Of a stretch of 64,000 nucleotides of DNA, positions 4,977 through 42,325 are shown piece by piece. The DNA lies in the NCBI GenBank assembly GCA_024704765.1, contig JAKMXF010000297.1:124001-188000 (forward strand), written 5' to 3'. Numbering within the stretch: position 1 is the first letter of the stretch; the number at the start of each line of letters is the position of its first letter. Origin of the DNA: Oopsacas minuta (lineage: Eukaryota > Animalia > Porifera). The notes beneath the pieces were generated by a model. The model worked only from the letters and a program-made list of their open reading frames with translations. It was not told the origin of the DNA and ran no database searches. The translations under genes were made by a program, and so were the position numbers.

Positions 4977-6023
4977 ATGTGGAACTGGATAGTTGGAAAT
5001 GTAAATACTTTAACTGAAACTGTACATAATCAAATTTCAACTTCTGAGGAAAATATTGATCCCGAAGCTCAATCTTTTCCGAGTAAGGTATCTTCTCTAG
5101 TTAAAGACGACTTGACCCCAGAGGCAACACAAGATGTGAGTAATATACAGAGTGATTCTAGCGAGCATGAGTTGGATTCTACAGAGCCAATTACCAAGCA
5201 GAAACCTTTAGATCCTGAAAAATCTCCTAAAGTGGATAAAAAAGATTCCAGTATTTTAATGCCGAATCTTAAGGAAGCGACTAATTCTGGATTGAATGCA
5301 TTTACCAGCGGAATTTCTAACATATTCAATGACGTCACTGATGTAGTCAAATCATCGAAACTTGTATCCGAGTTTCTCAGTGCTGAAGAGCAGTTCCAAA
5401 AGAAGAATGAACAAACTAACTCAGTACAAACAAATGCGACAGCTCCTTGGTACGGATACAACGAGGCTGAAGAAATGAAAACTCAAATTCTTGAGATCTC
5501 CTCCAGTCATAGAAACCTTCTCAGAGAGCCGCCTCCAGGCTCTACCCTGAACTATTCACTAGATAGTTGCTTTGGTCAGGCAATGTTGATGTTGTCAGAA
5601 GATCAACGGCTTGAGCAGGCTAGATTTAGTCTAGTCCCACAGAAAATATCAGAAGAGAACTTCTGGAGAAACTATTTTTACCGCGTGCACTTGGTGAAAC
5701 AGTCAATACAGCTTGGAACTCTGAAACGTGAAGAGAAGGACTCTGATACAGAGGGTCGTTCTAACACTACCTCATCTGTAGCAACAGATGAAATAGAGCC
5801 AGATGAGTTTGTTTCTGATGCACTAGATATTCAGAGCAGCTGTGAACACCAGCTAACTCAGGAGGAGCTAAATCAATTGAAATTGACTACCAGTCCTAAA
5901 CCAAATGAAGAATCTAATGTGGATGATGCACTTGCTCAAGAACTCAAAGATTTCAACCCGGATGAAGTCAAAGATGAAGATTTTGACTATGCCGATTTTG
6001 AGAATTTATTGAAAGATAACTAA
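4977..6023 (+). CDS. SYAP1: Synapse-associated protein 1-like BSD domain protein
   Basis: BSD core RFSLVPQKISEENFWRNYFYRVHL, APWYGY motif, acidic C-tail; first ATG at 4977 (track start is TTG). Confidence 0.85.
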   Translation: MWNWIVGNVNTLTETVHNQISTSEENIDPEAQSFPSKVSSLVKDDLTPEATQDVSNIQSDSSEHELDSTEPITKQKPLDPEKSPKVDKKDSSILMPNLKEATNSGLNAFTSGISNIFNDVTDVVKSSKLVSEFLSAEEQFQKKNEQTNSVQTNATAPWYGYNEAEEMKTQILEISSSHRNLLREPPPGSTLNYSLDSCFGQAMLMLSEDQRLEQARFSLVPQKISEENFWRNYFYRVHLVKQSIQLGTLKREEKDSDTEGRSNTTSSVATDEIEPDEFVSDALDIQSSCEHQLTQEELNQLKLTTSPKPNEESNVDDALAQELKDFNPDEVKDEDFDYADFENLLKDN

Positions 6024-6983
6024 TGATACATAAAACAAATTCTTTATTCTGTTTAACATTCATGATTCAGAACCTGTATTTAGCAGTATTTACCTAAATA
6101 AAAGTGGTATGTAAACTGTGTTGGTTTTTGTGTGAGTTTTGCTTGTTGTACCATTTTCCTAGGAATGGATTCATAAGTTTGACAATTTTTTGTTATAGCA
6201 AACATTTCTGTCTGCATCATTTTCTGCTAAGTCATAGATAATAATTACTTGCCCAATCGTCTCCTACACATTCCTAATCTTTCAACAAGGTTAAATTACA
6301 GGAGATGAGTCTAGCCAAAGCAGGTATACGCGTGCTTATCAAATCCAATTTATGTGCAAGTTACAATAATGTTTTCACGAATTATAAGTGTACTTTATTA
6401 ACCAAATTATTTTGCTTCCAGGTACTTTTCATAACCGCATAACTCTCACAGTTATCAGAGAGTATTGTTTCGTAAAATTGGAGATTTTATTTCGTTGTGT
6501 CTCACGTAATAATATACCAACCACTGGATAGTTTTTTGTTGCAGCCAAATTTGTGTATGGATGTTAAGTACTGGTAACATGTTAACATCTACCGCGCTAG
6601 ATGTTAATACAATTGATAGCCGCTGTCTTGAACGAATTTCTTCCCCCCTCTAGTTGCACCTGCTTCCTCGAACAGATAGAGAATTCTGATGGTTTATTTC
6701 AACTAAATATATCCACGGAGAGATATGTGAAGCGAGTATTTGATATTTTATTAAAGCTATTTAGTAGTCTGATAGCCGTCACAATTCCAAATAAATTATT
6801 TGAACACAATAAATATGATTTATATTTAATTATTTTTACCCAACTACACAGTTCATGAACTGACCTGACCTGTCCTGTCCTGACAATAAGTGACCATGTA
6901 AATATCCTACCATATTTTGTCTCTTTAATTATTCTCATTAGATATATGTAAGTTAGTCTAGGGAGATCATACACAACACCTGT

Positions 6984-8432
6984 ATGCCGAGCGATATTAA
7001 AGCCCATAGAGGCTTAGGTAGTACTGATGGGCCCTCTATCTCAGCTGATGCTAAAATACCATCTGTATCGTTCCTTGGAGAAATAAATATAGAAAAAATG
7101 AAAAGTGAATTACACATTGAGAATAATTTAATTAGTGTATCAGAGTTAGTGGGTATCCTTGAGGAGAGATACAATTATGCAATTGCAAAGGAAATCAAAC
7201 TATCAGCACTATCATTATTTAACTCTGACAAACTGACCATGGAACAGGTTCAGACACTCCTTGCTCCTCAGAAAAATCAACTATGGGTTAAATTCTGCCG
7301 CCTTAACAATCATGTTCCTAAATCTGAGGAAGATATCTTGCTTGCGTTTAAACATTTTGGTTTGAACTTTTCACTTGATGAAGCTCGTTATTTCAGAAAT
7401 AAAATGAATTCTCAAGGAGAGTTTGTAATTGGTATGAATGATTGGAGACAGTTTTTGCTACTTCATCCTTACTCGATTGATAAATCAAAGATGAACATTT
7501 GGAGAGAACATGCATCATTCCTTGATATCGGAGAGGATTTTCTAATACCAGATGATTTCTCAGAACATGAAAAAATTTCTGGATTCTGGTGGCGTCAGCT
7601 TGCTTCTGGAGCTGGTGCTGGTATTGTGTCTCGTACCTGTACTGCTCCTCTAGACAGACTTAAAGTTCTGATGCAAACTCAATCACTTATGGAGCGAAAA
7701 CTTAGACTACTGGAGGGGTTCAAGGGAATGTTAGCTGAAGGTGGAGTGCTCTCCTTGTGGAGAGGGAACGGAGTTAATGTACTCAAGATTGCACCTGAAA
7801 CATCTATCAAATTCTACGCATATGAGACTGTAAAGTCCCTCATTAACGAGAACACATCAGAGCTGACCGTAGGACAAAGATTCCTCGCAGGTTCTTTAGC
7901 GGGCTCTTTTGCACAAACAGCAATATACCCATTAGAAGTAGTTAAAACAAGACTTGCTATCGCACACAATAACCAGTACGCAGGCCTGTGGGACTGCGTT
8001 GGTAGAATTCTGTCTGGAGAAGGCGTCCGTGGTTTCTTCAAGGGGTGGGTCCCCAATATGCTTGGAATACTCCCTTATGCTGGTATAGATCTGACGATAT
8101 ATGAAACTAGTAAGAACGAATATCTCAAACGCTATCATCCAAACAGTCATGGAGATCCTGGAGTATTTCTTCCGGTCGCATGTGGAACTTTTTCATGTAC
8201 ATGTGGACAATTGTGTTGCTACCCTCTATCGCTAGTTCGTACTCGTTTGCAAGCTCGAGTTGTTAACAAAGTTTCTATGGTGCAAATATTCAAAGAGATT
8301 ATCAATACTGATGGTATACTTGGGCTCTATCGCGGCCTTTACCCGAACTGTCTCAAGGTTGTGCCAGCAGTCAGTATCAGCTACCTTGTGTATGAGAGAC
8401 TTAGAACTGGACTAGGCGTTTACCGAGGATAA
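6984..8432 (+). CDS. Calcium-binding mitochondrial carrier (SCaMC, SLC25A23/24/25 family; ATP-Mg/Pi carrier) with degenerate EF-hand region
   Basis: IGEDFLIPDDFSEHEKISGFWWRQL, SRTCTAPLDRLKV, LWRGNGVNVLKIAPE, three PxE/DxxKxR carrier repeats, CLKVVPAVSISYLVYE. Confidence 0.9.
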   Translation: MPSDIKAHRGLGSTDGPSISADAKIPSVSFLGEINIEKMKSELHIENNLISVSELVGILEERYNYAIAKEIKLSALSLFNSDKLTMEQVQTLLAPQKNQLWVKFCRLNNHVPKSEEDILLAFKHFGLNFSLDEARYFRNKMNSQGEFVIGMNDWRQFLLLHPYSIDKSKMNIWREHASFLDIGEDFLIPDDFSEHEKISGFWWRQLASGAGAGIVSRTCTAPLDRLKVLMQTQSLMERKLRLLEGFKGMLAEGGVLSLWRGNGVNVLKIAPETSIKFYAYETVKSLINENTSELTVGQRFLAGSLAGSFAQTAIYPLEVVKTRLAIAHNNQYAGLWDCVGRILSGEGVRGFFKGWVPNMLGILPYAGIDLTIYETSKNEYLKRYHPNSHGDPGVFLPVACGTFSCTCGQLCCYPLSLVRTRLQARVVNKVSMVQIFKEIINTDGILGLYRGLYPNCLKVVPAVSISYLVYERLRTGLGVYRG

Positions 8433-38097: not shown

Positions 38098-38259
38098 GCT
38101 ACAATTGGATAAAGAGTATGCTGAATCCGAATAGTAATGTATTAATTCAATTTTGCAATTTTATACTTTGCTAAGTTCGAGGCACGAAGTGCCGAGTCCC
38201 ATGCGAACACAAAGTGTTCGCAAGCCGCACAGCGCGAGCAAGCGAAGCGGCTCGTTCTA
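38098..38259 (+). mobile_element. Helitron-like repeat end with a cluster of GC-rich hairpins
   Basis: ggcac-gaa-gtgcc, gcgaacac-aaa-gtgttcgc, cgagc...gctcg then ttctaa|t; related to the inverted copy at 41997. Confidence 0.5.
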
Positions 38260-38607: not shown

Positions 38608-40656
38608 ATGCATCATCGCTCGTATCAATCTATCCTCCCCACACACAATAAACTCTTGCAGAAGCGCTGGGATGACACTTATTATGATGAACATCGTCGC
38701 CGTGTCAAGACAGCAAGTCCAATGGTGTCTACAACCGCCCCCAAACAACACCCTCACATCGTGAATAAACTCAAGAAGCAGCAACGTGAGCAAGAGAGAT
38801 ACTTGGAAGTACAGCGGGACAATGAGACACTAATGGGCCACATGTCTGCTATTATGGATAAAGGAAGTGGTGTGGATCATCGTAACAAATATATACACGG
38901 GAGCTTGAATTATGGCAAGCGAGTTGATGAATCGCAACGTATTGAACAGGAGAACAAAAAAATGCTGACACGGATCAAGTCACGGCCTGCTAACTACAGC
39001 GTATCTGAGTGGTTGAGTGATCGTCTTGAGAATGAGAGACTACTCAGTATGATCACTACTCACCCTCCTAACCAGCAAACAAAATCTGCTCGTCTCTATG
39101 TCAGAGATAGAAAGGAACAATCTCAGCCATCCCTGTTTCCTTTACAAGAAGAAAATGGTTCATTAGAAACTTTTGATCCTTCTGTTACTGATACTATCGA
39201 GTCTTTAAAGAGAGAATTAGAGGTTGCTAAAGTTAAACTTGACAAAAGTAATATTGTAAAAGCTGATATTTCAGAGGTGAAATCATTCTCAAGTCCTCCA
39301 AACCTTGTTAAATTAGTGATGGAGGCTTATGCCATTCTATATGGGAAGACAGGAAATAATCTTTGGAGTCAAAGTAAAAAGCTTATAGCACAGGCTCCAG
39401 AGGGTATTGGCATCAATAATATACTTTTACCAACTTTGAAGAAATTGAAATTCTATATTGAAAATCCGAATATTGCACCAGATGAATTGAAGAAAGTATC
39501 TGCAAGCATTGTATCAATTTGGAATTGGATAGTGAGTGTATATAACTATGGAATTATAGCACATAAGTATTGGATAAGAGCTGAAGAGAAAGGAATAATA
39601 CGATCAGAAACATTGGTGATTAGTCCATATAATGCAATGGTTGATAAGCCTTCTCCTGTTAAAGAGAAAACAGAAAAAACTATACATCCTATAGAAATTT
39701 CCGCTACTGACACTTTAGATTCTTTAGAGAAAGAATTAGATGTTGCTAAGGCTAAATTAGCTAAGTGTAATATTTCGAAATATGATATAACAACGTTGAA
39801 GTCATTCTCAAGACCTCCAGCCCTTGTTAAATTAGTACTAGAGGCCTATGCCATTCTATTCGGGAAGACAGGAGATAATCTTTGGTTTCAAGGTATCAAA
39901 TCACTTACCCAGCATAATCCAGACGCTATTGACATTGATAACATGCCTCTACCCATTTTGAACAAATTGAAATGCTACATAGAAAATCCTGATACTACAC
40001 CAGAAGCATTGAAGAAAATATCTTTATGTATTGTATCATTATGGAATTGGATTGAATGTATGTATAATTATGGAATTCTAGCACATAAGTATTGGATAAG
40101 AGCTAAAGAGAAAGGAATAATACGACCAGAAAAATTCATTATTCAAAACGATGCGATTCCTGCTAAGCCTTCTCCTGTGAAAGATAAGACAGTAAAATCT
40201 GTATATCCACTAGAAATAAGTGCTACTGATACTATCGAGTCTTTAGAGAAAGAATTAGCTGTTGCTAAGGCTAAATTAGGTCAGTGTGATGTTAACAAGA
40301 ACGATATAACCGAAGTGAAGTCATACTCAAATCCTCCAGTGCTTGTTAAATTTGTAGTAGAGGCTTATTCTGTTCTACTCGGGAACAGAGGAGATAAACT
40401 ATATCACCAAGGGATGAAATCACTTGCAGCTGTTCTTCCAGAGGTGATAGTTAATGTTGATAATATATCTCTACCAGTTTTGGAGAGATTGAAGTTCTAC
40501 ATTGAAGATCCGAACATAAACCATCAGAGATTAAAGTGTGTTTCCGCTTGCATGTGCTCACTATGGGAATGGATTGAGCATGTATATCACTATGCTGCTA
40601 TAGGTAATAAATTGGATCAACTGCACACAGCAAAATATTCAAAAGATAATTATTAA
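38608..40656 (+). CDS. CFAP97D/Hemingway-like N-terminal domain fused to three dynein microtubule-binding (stalk-tip) domains
   Basis: N-terminal MHHRSYQSILPTHNKLLQKRWD...HRRRVKTASPMV...RDNETL matches the CFAP97D2/KIAA1430 family; repeats ADISEVKSFSSPPNLVKLVMEAYAIL...LWSQSKKL...YIENP...WNWI match axonemal dynein MTBD. Confidence 0.85.
   Translation: MHHRSYQSILPTHNKLLQKRWDDTYYDEHRRRVKTASPMVSTTAPKQHPHIVNKLKKQQREQERYLEVQRDNETLMGHMSAIMDKGSGVDHRNKYIHGSLNYGKRVDESQRIEQENKKMLTRIKSRPANYSVSEWLSDRLENERLLSMITTHPPNQQTKSARLYVRDRKEQSQPSLFPLQEENGSLETFDPSVTDTIESLKRELEVAKVKLDKSNIVKADISEVKSFSSPPNLVKLVMEAYAILYGKTGNNLWSQSKKLIAQAPEGIGINNILLPTLKKLKFYIENPNIAPDELKKVSASIVSIWNWIVSVYNYGIIAHKYWIRAEEKGIIRSETLVISPYNAMVDKPSPVKEKTEKTIHPIEISATDTLDSLEKELDVAKAKLAKCNISKYDITTLKSFSRPPALVKLVLEAYAILFGKTGDNLWFQGIKSLTQHNPDAIDIDNMPLPILNKLKCYIENPDTTPEALKKISLCIVSLWNWIECMYNYGILAHKYWIRAKEKGIIRPEKFIIQNDAIPAKPSPVKDKTVKSVYPLEISATDTIESLEKELAVAKAKLGQCDVNKNDITEVKSYSNPPVLVKFVVEAYSVLLGNRGDKLYHQGMKSLAAVLPEVIVNVDNISLPVLERLKFYIEDPNINHQRLKCVSACMCSLWEWIEHVYHYAAIGNKLDQLHTAKYSKDNY
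39181..40656 (+). repeat. Intragenic tandem triplication with exact 519-nt (173-aa) period
   Basis: S[V/A]TDT[I/L][E/D]SL starts at 39181, 39700 and 40219; third unit ends shortly after the MTBD. Confidence 0.92.
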
Positions 40657-41071
40657 TAATTATCTCTCCAAACTAACATGTTCACAGTCTCCAACCCGAT
40701 CTTCTTATTTTTGTTATTTATTATTATTTATCCCGAACAAACACATTATTTATTTTTATATTCTCTAATCGTATATCACATTCTTTACCTCTAATTTACA
40801 TATTTGAAGATTTATAAGGGAATGGGAATACAGATAACTGTTTGGACGGGACGGATGTTAATCTGAAAAACATATGTATCACAGCTAAGCATTTCCCTGA
40901 ATAGCACTTTTTCGTACAAATGACAAGACACTGGTGTAGAACATGCAGCTGTTAACAACGAAGTTCATATGGCAGTCATGCAGCATAAATTATATAATAT
41001 CAACATATAATTACAGAGAATGTCTAAATCAGCTAATAATACATAATATAGAATAAAAATTATTTAAATTT

Positions 41072-41884: not shown

Positions 41885-41983
41885 AATATCAGTATAATAT
41901 CAGTATAATATCAGTATAATATCAGTATAATATCAGTATAATATCAGTATAATATCAGTATAATATCAGTATAATATCAGTAT
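41885..41983. repeat. Perfect 11-bp minisatellite x9 (aatatcagtat)
   Basis: Nine identical copies, 99 bp. Confidence 0.97.
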
Positions 41984-41996
41984 AATTGTGGAATTA

Positions 41997-42325
41997 ATAG
42001 AATACGAGCCTTTGGCTCGTCGCTTCGCGATGAACTCGGCGCATTGCGCCTCGAGGTGGGCAAACAACAATTGAGATTTAATATTGATGTTGTTTACAAT
42101 ATTCACACTCAGCATACTCGATTATCCAAGTATAGTCATTGAAAGTATGATTCTACCTCAATTTTGAAATTTGTTTGCTTTATGTACCTAAAAGTAAACA
42201 AATATTCATAACATGTTGTTTACAATACCATATTCGGACTCAGTATACTCGATTACCATAGGAAAGTGGTGAAAGCATGTTTCTACAACAATTTTGAAAT
42301 TTGTTTACTTTATGTTCATAAAAAC
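41997..42325 (-). mobile_element. Helitron-like repeat end, inverted relative of the 38098 copy, with an internal two-unit tandem duplication
   Basis: Hairpins acgagcc-ttt-ggctcgt and ggcgc-att-gcgcc; reverse complement shares ttggataa..gagtatgctga and tcgaggc...gccgagt with 38098-38259; atgttgtttacaata...caattttgaaatttgttt occurs twice. Confidence 0.5.

What the first reader, a model, noticed from the sequence alone, without database searches (positions are those of the whole stretch)
38608..40656. Motor-less protein with three dynein microtubule-binding domains fused to a ciliary CFAP97/Hemingway domain
Seen: one ORF with an N-terminal CFAP97D-like domain and three 173-aa repeats. Each repeat has a short coiled coil (LxxELxVAKxKL), H1 (D-I-x-E/T-V/L-K-S), the PP turn, VKLV-E-AY, W-x-S/G-x-K, YIENP and WxW-x-Y, matching the axonemal dynein stalk tip (pattern ADITxVKSMKNPPxGVKLVMxAV...YWxxSKKLL...YxxNPxF...LCKW). 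There is no AAA ring, linker or tail. Established: MTBD affinity is normally switched by stalk registry driven by the AAA ring, and CFAP97-family proteins are ciliary. Inference: a new multivalent microtubule binder, cross-linker or brake locked in one affinity state, possibly competing with dyneins in the axoneme or on cytoplasmic microtubule tracks. I know of no described animal protein with this architecture.
Basis: partly seen in the sequence, partly recalled or inferred. Interest (0 to 1): 0.92.

Follow-up and report, generated by a model that had tools for sequence, protein, structure and literature searches.

The report
Motor-less dynein feet on ciliary anchor
A glass-sponge gene joins a protein known to sit on the outside of flagellar microtubule doublets to three copies of the small "foot" that dynein motors use to grip microtubules, with no motor attached; I found no description of this conserved, apparently transcribed kind of microtubule-binding protein, and motor-less arrays of the same foot also occur in many protists.

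Summary
Window 38608-40656 (+) is one intron-less 682-aa ORF. Pfam finds Hmw_CFAP97 (E 8e-19) plus three dynein-stalk/MTBD stretches (E 7e-13), with a 519-nt repeat period.

- **N-terminus:** residues 1-176 are collinear with, and about 50% identical to, stand-alone animal CFAP97D1. Cryo-EM places that protein on the outer surface of sperm doublets.
- **Repeats:** one modelled repeat folds as a dynein MTBD (pLDDT 82; VIA Z 15.0 and 14.1 to microtubule-bound DNAH7 and dynein-1 MTBDs). By sequence the repeats are closest to flap-less inner-arm DNAH6. The stalk is cut to about 17 residues per strand.
- **No motor:** there is no AAA ring, linker or tail.
- **Reality of the gene:** intact orthologues with 2-6 repeats occur in at least six related assemblies or transcriptomes; the only named one is the glass sponge Vazella. 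Three are syntenic. Selection is purifying (pN 0.15-0.30, pS about 0.7). One RNA-like run covers exactly the ORF.

New here: 61 further short cluster representatives carry 2-5 tandem MTBDs without a motor. Named sources are Diphylleia, Mantamonas, Picozoa and a dinoflagellate. The CFAP97D1 fusion was found only in the glass-sponge family.

Best reading: an ATP-independent, multivalent doublet binder or stabiliser. The function is inferred. I found no literature on it.

The parts
38608..40656 (+). Complete single-exon CDS, 682 aa plus stop
   Evidence: ORF listing. In-frame stop 3 codons upstream. No joints inside the ORF in any run, and RNA-like depth confined to 38614-40780 in run X4. Orthologues are also single ORFs.
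38608..39048 (+). CFAP97D1-type N-terminal region (aa 1-147), helical and basic (pI 9.8)
   Evidence: PF13879 E 7.9e-19. Query residues 3-171 align collinearly with residues 2-170 of sea-urchin sperm-doublet CFAP97 8snb_4T, E 2e-25; also CFAP97D1 9v10_Aa and 8otz_Z. 46-52% identity over 84-96% of the region to stand-alone CFAP97D1-like proteins of 168-304 aa. pN 0.15 against pS 0.6-0.7.
39049..39168 (+). Disordered linker 0 (aa 148-187)
   Evidence: pLDDT below 50 in the full-length AF2 model. Poorly conserved.
39169..39597 (+). MTBD repeat 1 (aa 188-330): 17-residue CC1 stub, H1-H6, CC2 stub
   Evidence: HMM unit score 217. AF2 helices 197-327 with pLDDT 70-86. PF12777 stretch.
39598..39678 (+). 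Linker 1 (aa 331-357), P/K/E-rich, disordered
   Evidence: pLDDT below 50. Composition. Highest pN of the gene.
39679..40122 (+). MTBD repeat 2 (aa 358-505)
   Evidence: AF2 of aa 359-517: pLDDT 82, pTM 0.77. The Foldseek top 50 are all chains of dynein or dynein-bearing axoneme entries; best is 6rzb_C, TM 0.68/0.72, rmsd 2.8. VIA Z 15.0 (6rza_X) and 14.1 (6rzb_C).
40123..40203 (+). Linker 2 (aa 506-532)
   Evidence: pLDDT below 50. Composition.
40204..40653 (+). MTBD repeat 3 (aa 533-682), with a distinct C-terminal tail (KLDQL...SKD) present in every orthologue with a complete C-terminus except the most divergent lineage (P0008 and P0015/P0019 end KLKQL)
   Evidence: HMM unit score 211. Best Pfam PF12777 stretch at aa 549-660. 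The tail is visible.

Best explanation
This is a real, apparently transcribed gene, found so far only in a small family whose one named member is a glass sponge (Hexactinellida). It encodes an ATP-independent, multivalent microtubule binder. The N-terminal ~150-170 residues are the sponge counterpart of CFAP97D1. In sea-urchin and mammalian sperm that short, extended helical protein lies at a fixed address on the outer surface of axonemal doublet microtubules and is needed for axoneme integrity. To its C-terminus evolution has added a string of 2-6 (here 3) dynein-type microtubule-binding domains. Each keeps only a two-to-three-heptad stub of the stalk coiled coil, and flexible 27-40-residue P/K/E-rich linkers separate the domains. 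With no AAA ring there is nothing to shift the stalk registry. Each foot should therefore bind tubulin constitutively and individually weakly, at the intradimer site used by dyneins, with avidity coming from the array plus the CFAP97D1 anchor. The likely result is a staple that reinforces the doublet it sits on, or a passive elastic tether to the neighbouring doublet's B-tubule, where inner-arm dynein feet normally land. Shown: domain identities, fold, lack of motor, conservation, purifying selection, RNA-like coverage. Inferred: tubulin binding, axonemal location, stabiliser/tether role.
For: Domain identity: Pfam and PDB sequence searches. Fold of a repeat equals a dynein MTBD: AF2 pLDDT 82; Foldseek top 50 are all dynein or dynein-bearing axoneme chains; VIA Z 15.0, 14.1 and 13.0, then a drop to 5.7 or less for unrelated folds, apart from two non-dynein axonemal chains at Z 9.9 and 8.0. 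Beads-on-a-string full-length model with three folded globules and linkers of pLDDT below 50. The repeats keep dynein-consensus columns, including K/R at profile positions 31 and 38 (H1) and 93, the PP turn and VS..W of H6. Closest dynein class is flap-less inner-arm DNAH6 (75 bits, only a 4-residue insertion and a 2-residue gap) against cytoplasmic dynein at 52 bits and outer-arm chains at 39-48 bits. The N-terminus is collinear with stand-alone CFAP97D1. CFAP97D1 is an outer-surface doublet MAP acting with TSSK6/EFCAB3, and the family is needed for axoneme integrity (PMC13066092, PMC11779644, PMC13406575, PMC10425847). Reality of the gene: intact orthologous ORFs in L001, L003, L004 and L005, synteny in three of them, pN much lower than pS, Vazella Trinity transcripts carrying both domains, and RNA-like depth over exactly the ORF with no joints. 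An isolated MTBD is 'permanently primed' for binding; only H1 moves (PMC6629372).
Against: There is no direct evidence of tubulin binding or of location. Several basic columns conserved in dyneins are lost or only partly kept in the repeats (profile positions 32, 96, 130, 138 and 139 lost; 70/71, 83 and 110 only 44-62% K/R). Repeat 3 is acidic overall (pI 5.95). No RFX X-box or conserved upstream motif supports a ciliary promoter. Repeat number varies from 2 to 6, so there is no fixed stoichiometry with the 8- or 16-nm lattice. The kind of run X4 is only guessed, its contigs are fragmentary, and no single read spans both halves in this species.
Confidence: 0.6

Rival explanations
1. A cytoplasmic microtubule bundler or dynein competitor. 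The protein decorates the long microtubule bundles of the hexactinellid trabecular syncytium, along which organelles stream. It would cross-link those bundles or compete with cytoplasmic dynein for its binding site, and the CFAP97 part would serve only as a generic basic microtubule-binding helix.
For: The family was found only in glass-sponge-type assemblies, and syncytial organisation is a trait specific to that class (PMC5095125). The MTBD fold matches the cytoplasmic dynein-1 MTBD nearly as well as axonemal ones. Depth in the RNA-like run is similar to that of a housekeeping neighbour, SAE1.
Against: The N-terminus is a full-length, collinear CFAP97D1 orthologue. All solved instances of that protein are on axonemal doublets, and family phenotypes are axonemal. 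By sequence the repeats are closest to inner-arm axonemal dyneins, not cytoplasmic dynein.
Confidence: 0.15
2. A regulated inter-doublet brake. Anchored on one doublet, the MTBD array clamps the neighbouring B-tubule when Ca2+ or phosphorylation changes, stopping sliding. This would contribute to the rapid flagellar arrest that follows Ca2+ action potentials in glass sponges.
For: Glass sponges are the only sponges known to arrest flagellar beating electrically, and the mechanism linking Ca2+ to arrest is unknown (PMC5095125). Mammalian CFAP97D1 works with an EF-hand protein (EFCAB3) and a kinase (TSSK6) (PMC13066092). The feet are of the inner-arm type that lands on the neighbouring B-tubule. 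Three feet on linkers of 27 residues between feet, behind a 40-residue first linker, could in principle span tens of nm (inference).
Against: Nothing in the sequence is a recognisable Ca2+ sensor. No partner was examined. The link rests only on two traits occurring in the same class of animals. Constitutive binding is the simpler expectation.
Confidence: 0.1
3. The MTBD fold has been repurposed. The repeats no longer bind tubulin but another ligand or each other, forming a spacer or scaffold that projects from the doublet.
For: Some dynein-conserved basic positions are lost. Unit pI values fall from 9.2 to 5.95 along the array. A sponge-specific, nearly invariant S-x-TDTIESL cap precedes each unit and has no dynein counterpart; homology to dynein chains in the PDB starts at about profile position 19.
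Against: The positions best conserved between the repeats and dyneins lie in H1, the PP turn and H6, the microtubule-facing elements by established knowledge of the dynein MTBD (Carter 2008, Redwine 2012; not re-checked here). Independent protist lineages keep the same consensus in their tandem arrays.
Confidence: 0.1
4. An artefact: a mis-assembled or pseudogenised dynein fragment, or two separate genes read as one ORF.
For: Tandem repeats are prone to assembly error. Trinity isoforms in Vazella end differently inside the repeats.
Against: Three DNA-like runs cover the locus seamlessly at flat depth with no differences. Five species keep intact ORFs with the same order of parts, three of them in the same gene neighbourhood. 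pN is much lower than pS. A dynein heavy chain has one MTBD, not three separated by short linkers.
Confidence: 0.03

Closest known systems
CFAP97D1 (sperm axonemal maintenance protein; C17orf105) and sea-urchin sperm-doublet 'CFAP97' (PDB 8snb chain 4T; 8otz_Z, 9v10_Aa)
   Same: Query residues 3-171 align collinearly with residues 2-170 of 8snb_4T (E 2e-25). Identity to stand-alone CFAP97D1-like proteins is about 50%. Passes PF13879.
   Different: Known members are stand-alone proteins of about 160-300 aa that recruit partners (TSSK6, EFCAB3) non-covalently. This one carries a covalent 500-residue array of dynein MTBDs.
Microtubule-binding domain of axonemal inner-arm dynein heavy chains, especially DNAH6 (PDB 9fqr_Xz, 9d2f_T, 8j07_g5); also DNAH1 and DNAH2
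   Same: Same six-helix fold on a coiled-coil hairpin. Same consensus in H1, the PP turn, H4 and H6. No H2-H3 flap, as in DNAH6.
   Different: No AAA+ ring, linker, tail or buttress. The stalk is cut to about 17 residues per strand. Three copies sit in tandem. Each unit has a sponge-specific N-cap motif.
Engineered SRS-MTBD chimeras used to study dynein binding (PDB 3err, 6rzb, 6rza)
   Same: An MTBD with a stalk much shorter than native and no motor; the chimeras bind microtubules at the intradimer site when the registry allows (PMC6629372). They are the top structural matches.
   Different: They are artificial, have a single foot, and their registry is fixed by the seryl-tRNA synthetase base. 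Here the hairpin end is free and the feet are multimerised.
Undescribed protist tandem-MTBD proteins (for example Diphylleia rotans EP00002_P001838, Mantamonas plastica EP00003_P028634, Picozoa EP01043_P067298, Yihiella yeosuensis EP00933_P031441)
   Same: 2-5 dynein-type MTBD units in polypeptides of 207-1277 aa, with no AAA domains. They score above true dynein heavy chains against the sponge repeat profile.
   Different: No CFAP97 domain. Many share an unrelated ~400-aa N-terminal region, and others are bare arrays with poly-K linkers. Common descent with the sponge repeats is unresolved.
Classical repeat MAPs (tau/MAP2/MAP4 repeats, tandem doublecortin domains, SAXO Mn repeats)
   Same: Multivalent, nucleotide-independent lattice binding through tandem modules joined by flexible linkers (my own knowledge, an analogy only).
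   Different: Unrelated folds and binding sites. None uses a motor's track-binding domain.

Membership tests
CFAP97/Hemingway family (Pfam PF13879), CFAP97D1 subfamily | Matches the family HMM above the curated threshold | tested here: met
   68.7 bits against a cut-off of 25.6, profile positions 1-99 of 100.
CFAP97/Hemingway family (Pfam PF13879), CFAP97D1 subfamily | Collinear similarity from the N-terminus to proteins annotated or solved as CFAP97D1 | tested here: met
   8snb_4T E 2e-25 (query residues 3-171, chain residues 2-170); 9v10_Aa and 8otz_Z. 46-52% identity to mollusc, brachiopod and annelid CFAP97D1-like proteins.
CFAP97/Hemingway family (Pfam PF13879), CFAP97D1 subfamily | Short stand-alone protein with no other domain | tested here: not met
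   682 aa with three PF12777 units after the CFAP97 part.
CFAP97/Hemingway family (Pfam PF13879), CFAP97D1 subfamily | Binds the outer surface of axonemal doublets | not testable with these tools
   Known for orthologues from cryo-EM (PMC13066092, PMC11779644). Here it is inferred from homology only.
Dynein heavy chain | Microtubule-binding domain (six helices on a coiled-coil hairpin; PF12777) | tested here: met
   Pfam 3 stretches. AF2 with Foldseek and VIA. Profile against PDB.
Dynein heavy chain | AAA+ ring (AAA1-6), linker and tail | tested here: not met
   No such Pfam hit. The ORF is bounded by stops and unrelated genes. The whole protein is 682 aa, against about 4000-4700 aa for dynein chains.
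Dynein heavy chain | Long antiparallel stalk that transmits registry changes | tested here: not met
   The CC1 helix is 17 residues long. H6 plus CC2 form one 29-residue helix, leaving a CC2 stub of about 16 residues. Homology to dynein chains in the PDB covers only about profile positions 19-135, at most 152.
Dynein heavy chain | Binds tubulin at the intradimer interface | not testable with these tools
   The consensus in H1, the PP turn and H6 is retained. Binding itself needs co-sedimentation or cryo-EM.
   Three units here; 61 further non-sponge cluster representatives.
   Sponge units form one clade (SH-aLRT 97). Its attachment among protist units has support of only 71-88, and by path length the nearest rows are dynein chains.

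The most novel reading that the evidence does not exclude
The dynein microtubule-binding domain is a mobile, reusable module that eukaryotes have repeatedly detached from the motor and multimerised into passive track-binders. In glass sponges, welded to the CFAP97D1 doublet anchor, it forms a regulated inter-doublet clamp that helps stop flagellar beating after the Ca2+ action potential. That would supply a molecular handle on the unexplained arrest response of these syncytial animals.
Probability: 0.1. Interest if true: 0.9.

Novelty: new variant of a known kind. Interest (0 to 1): 0.72.

Why it matters
To my knowledge, dynein's microtubule-binding domain has been treated as a part found only at the tip of the motor's stalk, with affinity set by the AAA ring. 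This finding shows a natural, conserved and apparently transcribed protein that uses the same foot without any motor, in tandem, attached to a protein with a known address on the axonemal doublet.

It gives cilia biologists a natural experiment on what an unregulated MTBD does on a doublet. It gives motor biophysicists a natural counterpart of the engineered SRS-MTBD constructs. It also exposes a wider class of motor-less MTBD arrays in protists, for which I found no literature, so MTBD-based MAPs may be a general and overlooked category. For sponge biology it is a class-restricted axonemal component in the one sponge group that can switch its flagella off.

Tried and rejected
- **RFX X-box search** (GTNRCCNNRGYAAC, up to 1 mismatch): 5 hits in the window, none upstream of the gene, no more than chance.
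- **Upstream regions of four orthologues, plus an internal intergenic stretch of L005:** no conserved block in the alignment.
- **Bacterial-type promoter/terminator scan of the 3' flank:** uninformative. No canonical AATAAA is evident after the stop.
- **dN/dS proper:** synonymous sites are saturated (pS 0.6-0.86), so only pN against pS is meaningful.
- **Phylogeny to find the donor dynein or tie the sponge repeats to the protist arrays:** 116 columns for 166 rows, deep nodes unresolved. Class assignment therefore rests on profile scores against named PDB chains.
- **The search for related loci in genome contigs (bacteria/archaea):** no relative, as expected.
- **Literature searches** for motor-less, stand-alone or tandem MTBD proteins, for PF12777, for non-dynein proteins with a dynein-MTBD-like fold, and for dynein MTBDs in Hexactinellida: nothing relevant.
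- **Papers not held:** Leung et al. 2023 (Cell), which would give the exact protofilament address of CFAP97D1, and Gui et al. 2021 on radial spokes.
- **ESM Atlas and AFDB cluster searches:** mostly dynein fragments with masked organisms. They did not settle whether other animals have motor-less MTBD proteins.
- **The search of earlier findings by sequence:** blank.
- **High- versus low-affinity state:** VIA Z is 14.1 to the microtubule-bound structure 6rzb and 13.0 to the low-affinity structure 3err. That gap is too small to call.
Full report

Yes. Window 38608-40656 (+) is a single uninterrupted ORF of 682 codons, with an in-frame stop three codons upstream of the ATG. Pfam gives two families above their curated thresholds:
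- PF13879 Hmw_CFAP97, aa 29-123, 68.7 bits.
- PF12777, the dynein microtubule-binding stalk, three stretches, 48.8 bits.

The DNA contains direct repeats with a 519-522 nt period (519 nt = 173 aa) and 65-81% identity. The neighbours are ordinary, unrelated genes: a protein O-mannosyltransferase, SAE1/ThiF, AIG1/FAR-17a and a small GTPase. A six-frame scan with HMMs built here finds no further MTBD or CFAP97 unit in the window. No AAA, linker or tail domain is present.

**2. Which organism, and is the gene real?**

The word-indexed protein search returns nine relatives, and an exact look-up adds further cluster members. The only named ones are Trinity transcripts of the glass sponge Vazella pourtalesii. 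The window therefore very probably comes from a hexactinellid such as Oopsacas minuta or Aphrocallistes vastus. This is an inference.

Four orthologous loci were fetched.
- L001, L003 and L005 share the window's gene order: PMT, ThiF, this gene, then AIG1, Ras, LRR and an AMP-binding gene.
- L004, the most divergent, lies in another context.
- All are single intact ORFs with the same order of parts.
- In L005 the gene caller had truncated the N-terminus. The true ORF, 5797-7857, encodes a full 686-aa orthologue.

Non-synonymous differences are far below synonymous ones:

| Region | pN | pS |
|---|---|---|
| N-terminus | 0.15 | about 0.6-0.8 overall (saturated) |
| MTBD cores | 0.30 | |
| Linkers | 0.35-0.46 | |

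These pN values are for the three closer orthologues (L001, L003, L005); against L004 they are higher (0.23, 0.42 and 0.52).

Four public runs of one sample hold the locus.
- Three runs have flat depth and contigs identical to the window where laid; there are gaps in the repeat-rich intergenic stretches. They look like DNA.
- The fourth has depth 1400-3950 over 38614-40583, falling to 852 in the 40584-40780 bin, about 100 just upstream and zero in 40781-40977. Its depth is similarly high over the SAE1 coding region and low in the intergenic stretch between the genes. It looks like RNA, although its kind is only guessed.
- No run shows a joint inside the ORF, so the gene is intron-less.

The Vazella transcripts carry the CFAP97 part and MTBD repeats on one mRNA. 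Mis-assembly, pseudogenisation and two separate genes are therefore effectively excluded.

**3. The N-terminal part**

It is not just a generic CFAP97 domain.
- Residues 3-171 align collinearly with residues 2-170 of the 231-aa 'CFAP97' chain of the sea-urchin sperm doublet (8snb_4T, E 2e-25).
- They also align with mammalian CFAP97D1 in sperm doublet structures (9v10_Aa, 8otz_Z) and with trypanosomatid homologues.
- A search with residues 1-180 alone returns stand-alone 'sperm axonemal maintenance protein CFAP97D1-like' proteins of 168-304 aa from molluscs, a brachiopod and an annelid, at 46-52% identity over 84-96% of the query.

The literature places CFAP97D1 on the outer surface of sperm doublets, together with the kinase TSSK6 and the EF-hand protein EFCAB3 (PMC13066092, PMC11779644, PMC13406575). 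Loss of family members gives broken axonemes and missing doublets in mouse and fly (PMC10425847, PMC11549365). The doublet models hold three copies of the chain per entry, which suggests a 16-nm spacing; that is my inference. In the full-length AF2 model this part is helical but of low confidence, as expected for a protein that orders on a lattice.

**4. The repeats**

I aligned 22 repeat units from the family (A1).
- AF2 of repeat 2 (aa 359-517) gives pLDDT 82 and pTM 0.77, with a 17-residue first helix, six short helices and a long last helix.
- The top 50 Foldseek PDB hits are all chains of dynein or dynein-bearing axoneme entries. The best is the mouse dynein-1 MTBD on microtubules (6rzb_C, TM 0.68/0.72, rmsd 2.8 Å).
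- VIA-align gives Z 15.0 (DNAH7 MTBD on microtubules), 14.1 (6rzb), 13.0 (3err) and 12.8 (DNAH1 stalk/MTBD). The remaining dynein MTBD structures follow at Z 12.7-8.8, together with two non-dynein axonemal chains at Z 9.9 and 8.0. Unrelated helical proteins score 5.7 or less.

The repeat profile scores against named PDB chains as follows:

| Chain | Bits |
|---|---|
| DNAH6 (only a 4-residue insertion and a 2-residue gap) | 75 |
| DNAH1 / Chlamydomonas DHC2 (these carry the H2-H3 flap insert) | 67-72 |
| DNAH2 | 63 |
| Cytoplasmic dynein-1 | 52 |
| Outer-arm chains | 39-48 |

The feet are therefore of the flap-less, single-headed inner-arm type. Homology to dynein chains in the PDB starts at about profile position 19 and mostly ends near 135, at most 152. 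Only about 17 residues of CC1 and about 16 of CC2 survive from a stalk that in the solved dynein stalk structures is far longer. The nearly invariant S-x-TDTIESL cap before each unit has no dynein counterpart.

A column-by-column comparison shows what the repeats keep and lose relative to the dynein consensus.
- Kept: the H1 consensus (K31, D-I-x-E, K/R38), the PP turn, V..V.EA, D.DnI....L.K...YI, K93 and VS....W.
- Lost or only partly kept: several other dynein-conserved basic columns.

The full-length model is beads on a string. It has three globules at pLDDT 70-86 and linkers at 148-187, 331-357 and 506-532 with pLDDT below 50. The linkers between the feet are P/K/E-rich.

**5. Evolution of the array**

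Repeat number is 2, 3, 4, 5 or 6 in different orthologues. Units are usually more alike within a protein (51-64% here, 81-96% in P0002, up to 100% in P0011) than between species (32-50%).

In the tree most units cluster by species. Repeat 1 of two species is orthologous. The last repeat carries a distinct tail (KLDQL...SKD) in every orthologue with a complete C-terminus except the most divergent lineage, where P0008 and P0015/P0019 end KLKQL. The array is therefore old, and its internal units have been duplicated or homogenised lineage by lineage. One species also has an upstream tandem paralogue that lost the CFAP97 part but keeps two feet (L005 3356-4402).

**6. A wider class**

An exhaustive HMMER search of 1.84 billion cluster representatives with the repeat profile gave 2262 hits at E ≤ 0.001. 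After the sponge family, the list is headed not by dyneins but by short proteins with several MTBD units.
- 61 of the 143 non-sponge proteins listed have 2-5 units in 207-1277 aa.
- Every dynein-sized protein has exactly one unit, and the first appears only at E 7e-21.
- Ten of the short proteins scanned with Pfam show PF12777 and no other family above its curated cut-off.
- Named sources are Diphylleia rotans, Mantamonas plastica, a picozoan, the dinoflagellate Yihiella yeosuensis and an MMETSP transcriptome. Others come from ocean metatranscriptomes and unnamed assemblies.
- One (P0161, same cluster and length as P0017) is a genomic ORF on a 678-kb contig between unrelated genes.
- Many share an unrelated, conserved N-terminal region of about 400 aa. 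Others are bare arrays with poly-lysine linkers.
- My CFAP97 N-terminal HMM hits only the sponge family. A region-restricted search found the CFAP97+MT architecture nowhere else.

Whether the sponge and protist arrays share one origin or were captured from inner-arm dyneins independently is unresolved. None of the five searches that addressed motor-less MTBD proteins, MTBD-like folds outside dynein, or dynein MTBDs in glass sponges found any description of such proteins; the Oopsacas genome paper does not mention dynein.

**7. How it most likely works**

Shown: a CFAP97D1-type anchor, three correctly folding dynein feet, flexible linkers, no motor, and long-term constraint.

Established elsewhere:
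- The dynein MTBD binds the tubulin intradimer interface.
- Its affinity is switched by a half-heptad shift of CC1 driven by the AAA ring.
- Apart from a movement of H1, it is 'permanently primed' for binding (PMC6629372).

Inferred: with free hairpin ends, each foot binds constitutively and probably weakly. The array plus the anchor supply avidity. The anchor's known address puts the feet on, or within reach of, axonemal doublets.

The simplest role is a staple that reinforces the doublet, consistent with the 'axoneme maintenance' phenotypes of the family. An alternative is a passive elastic tether to the neighbouring B-tubule, where inner-arm feet normally land.

I give this reading about 0.6. 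The identity and architecture claims are near-certain; the function is not. Rivals are a cytoplasmic bundler in the syncytium (0.15), a regulated brake linked to the Ca2+-triggered flagellar arrest peculiar to glass sponges (0.1; PMC5095125), a repurposed fold that no longer binds tubulin (0.1), and artefact (0.03).

**8. Comparison and novelty**

The protein passes the sequence tests for CFAP97D1 but not the family's stand-alone architecture. It has the dynein MTBD but fails every other defining feature of a dynein heavy chain, so it is not a dynein. It works like a repeat MAP built from a motor's foot. I rate it a new variant of a known kind: a tandem-module MAP with a module not previously reported outside the motor. 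It is of high interest to dynein and cilia specialists, and more so because the class extends to many protists.

**9. Earlier notes of this scan**

Two unchecked first-reader notes on other pieces of the same genome may be related:
- a dynein heavy chain said to lack its stalk and MTBD in frame (s1-277109);
- a 'stand-alone dynein MTBD-like domain in a non-motor protein' (s1-209502).

I could not reach those sequences. They are leads only and did not change my scores.

Noticed in passing
window 38179-38254 and 42002-42057: Short GC-rich multi-hairpin elements, for example GGCACGAAGTGCC and CGAGCCTTTGGCTCG. Summed contig depth across the surrounding bins is about 6 to 3,700 times the baseline of about 80-280, depending on run and site, and the excess is seen in all four runs. 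Many loose ends pile up at 42001-42057. They look like members of a very high-copy interspersed element family. Each occurs once in the window at up to 3 mismatches.
   Followed up: partly
window 41900-41987: Tandem repeat of an 11-nt unit (TCAGTATAATA, about 8 copies) directly upstream of the second hairpin element.
   Followed up: no
P0167 (Oscarella lobularis, NCBI 'uncharacterized protein', 651 aa): The same CFAP97D1-type N-terminus (49% identity to the window's) is followed by a long acidic low-complexity stretch and annexin repeats (PF00191). Either sponges have attached different payloads to this doublet anchor more than once, or this is a fused gene model.
   Followed up: no
L005 3356-4402: A tandem paralogue (348 aa) just upstream of the orthologue. 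It keeps the first ~10 residues (MTHHRSYQ...) and two MTBD units but has lost the whole CFAP97 domain.
   Followed up: partly
P0018, P0022, P0025, P0032, P0045, P0044, P0069, P0031, P0099, P0136, P0147: Protist proteins, one of them from the dinoflagellate Yihiella. They share a conserved ~400-aa N-terminal region followed by 2-5 motor-less MTBDs; the seven of them scanned with Pfam show no hit in that region. P0046 instead begins with what looks like WD40 repeats by eye (not scanned).
   Followed up: partly
PDB 7jtk chain C (Chlamydomonas radial spoke 1) and 9e5c chain 2e: Two non-dynein axonemal chains align to the repeat model at VIA Z 9.9 and 8.0 (13-16% identity). That is well above the unrelated background and below the best dynein MTBD structures (Z 10-15), overlapping the weakest of them (Z 8.8-9.6). 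They may be MTBD-like folds in spoke or doublet proteins. I did not identify them.
   Followed up: no
same genome, other pieces (earlier notes s1-277109, s1-209502): First-reader notes of a dynein heavy chain lacking its stalk and MTBD in frame, and of another stand-alone MTBD-like protein. They may be related to the origin or paralogues of this gene. I could not reach the sequences.
   Followed up: no
The syntenic loci L001 and L005 also end in an AMP-binding gene on the minus strand at the corresponding position.
   Followed up: no
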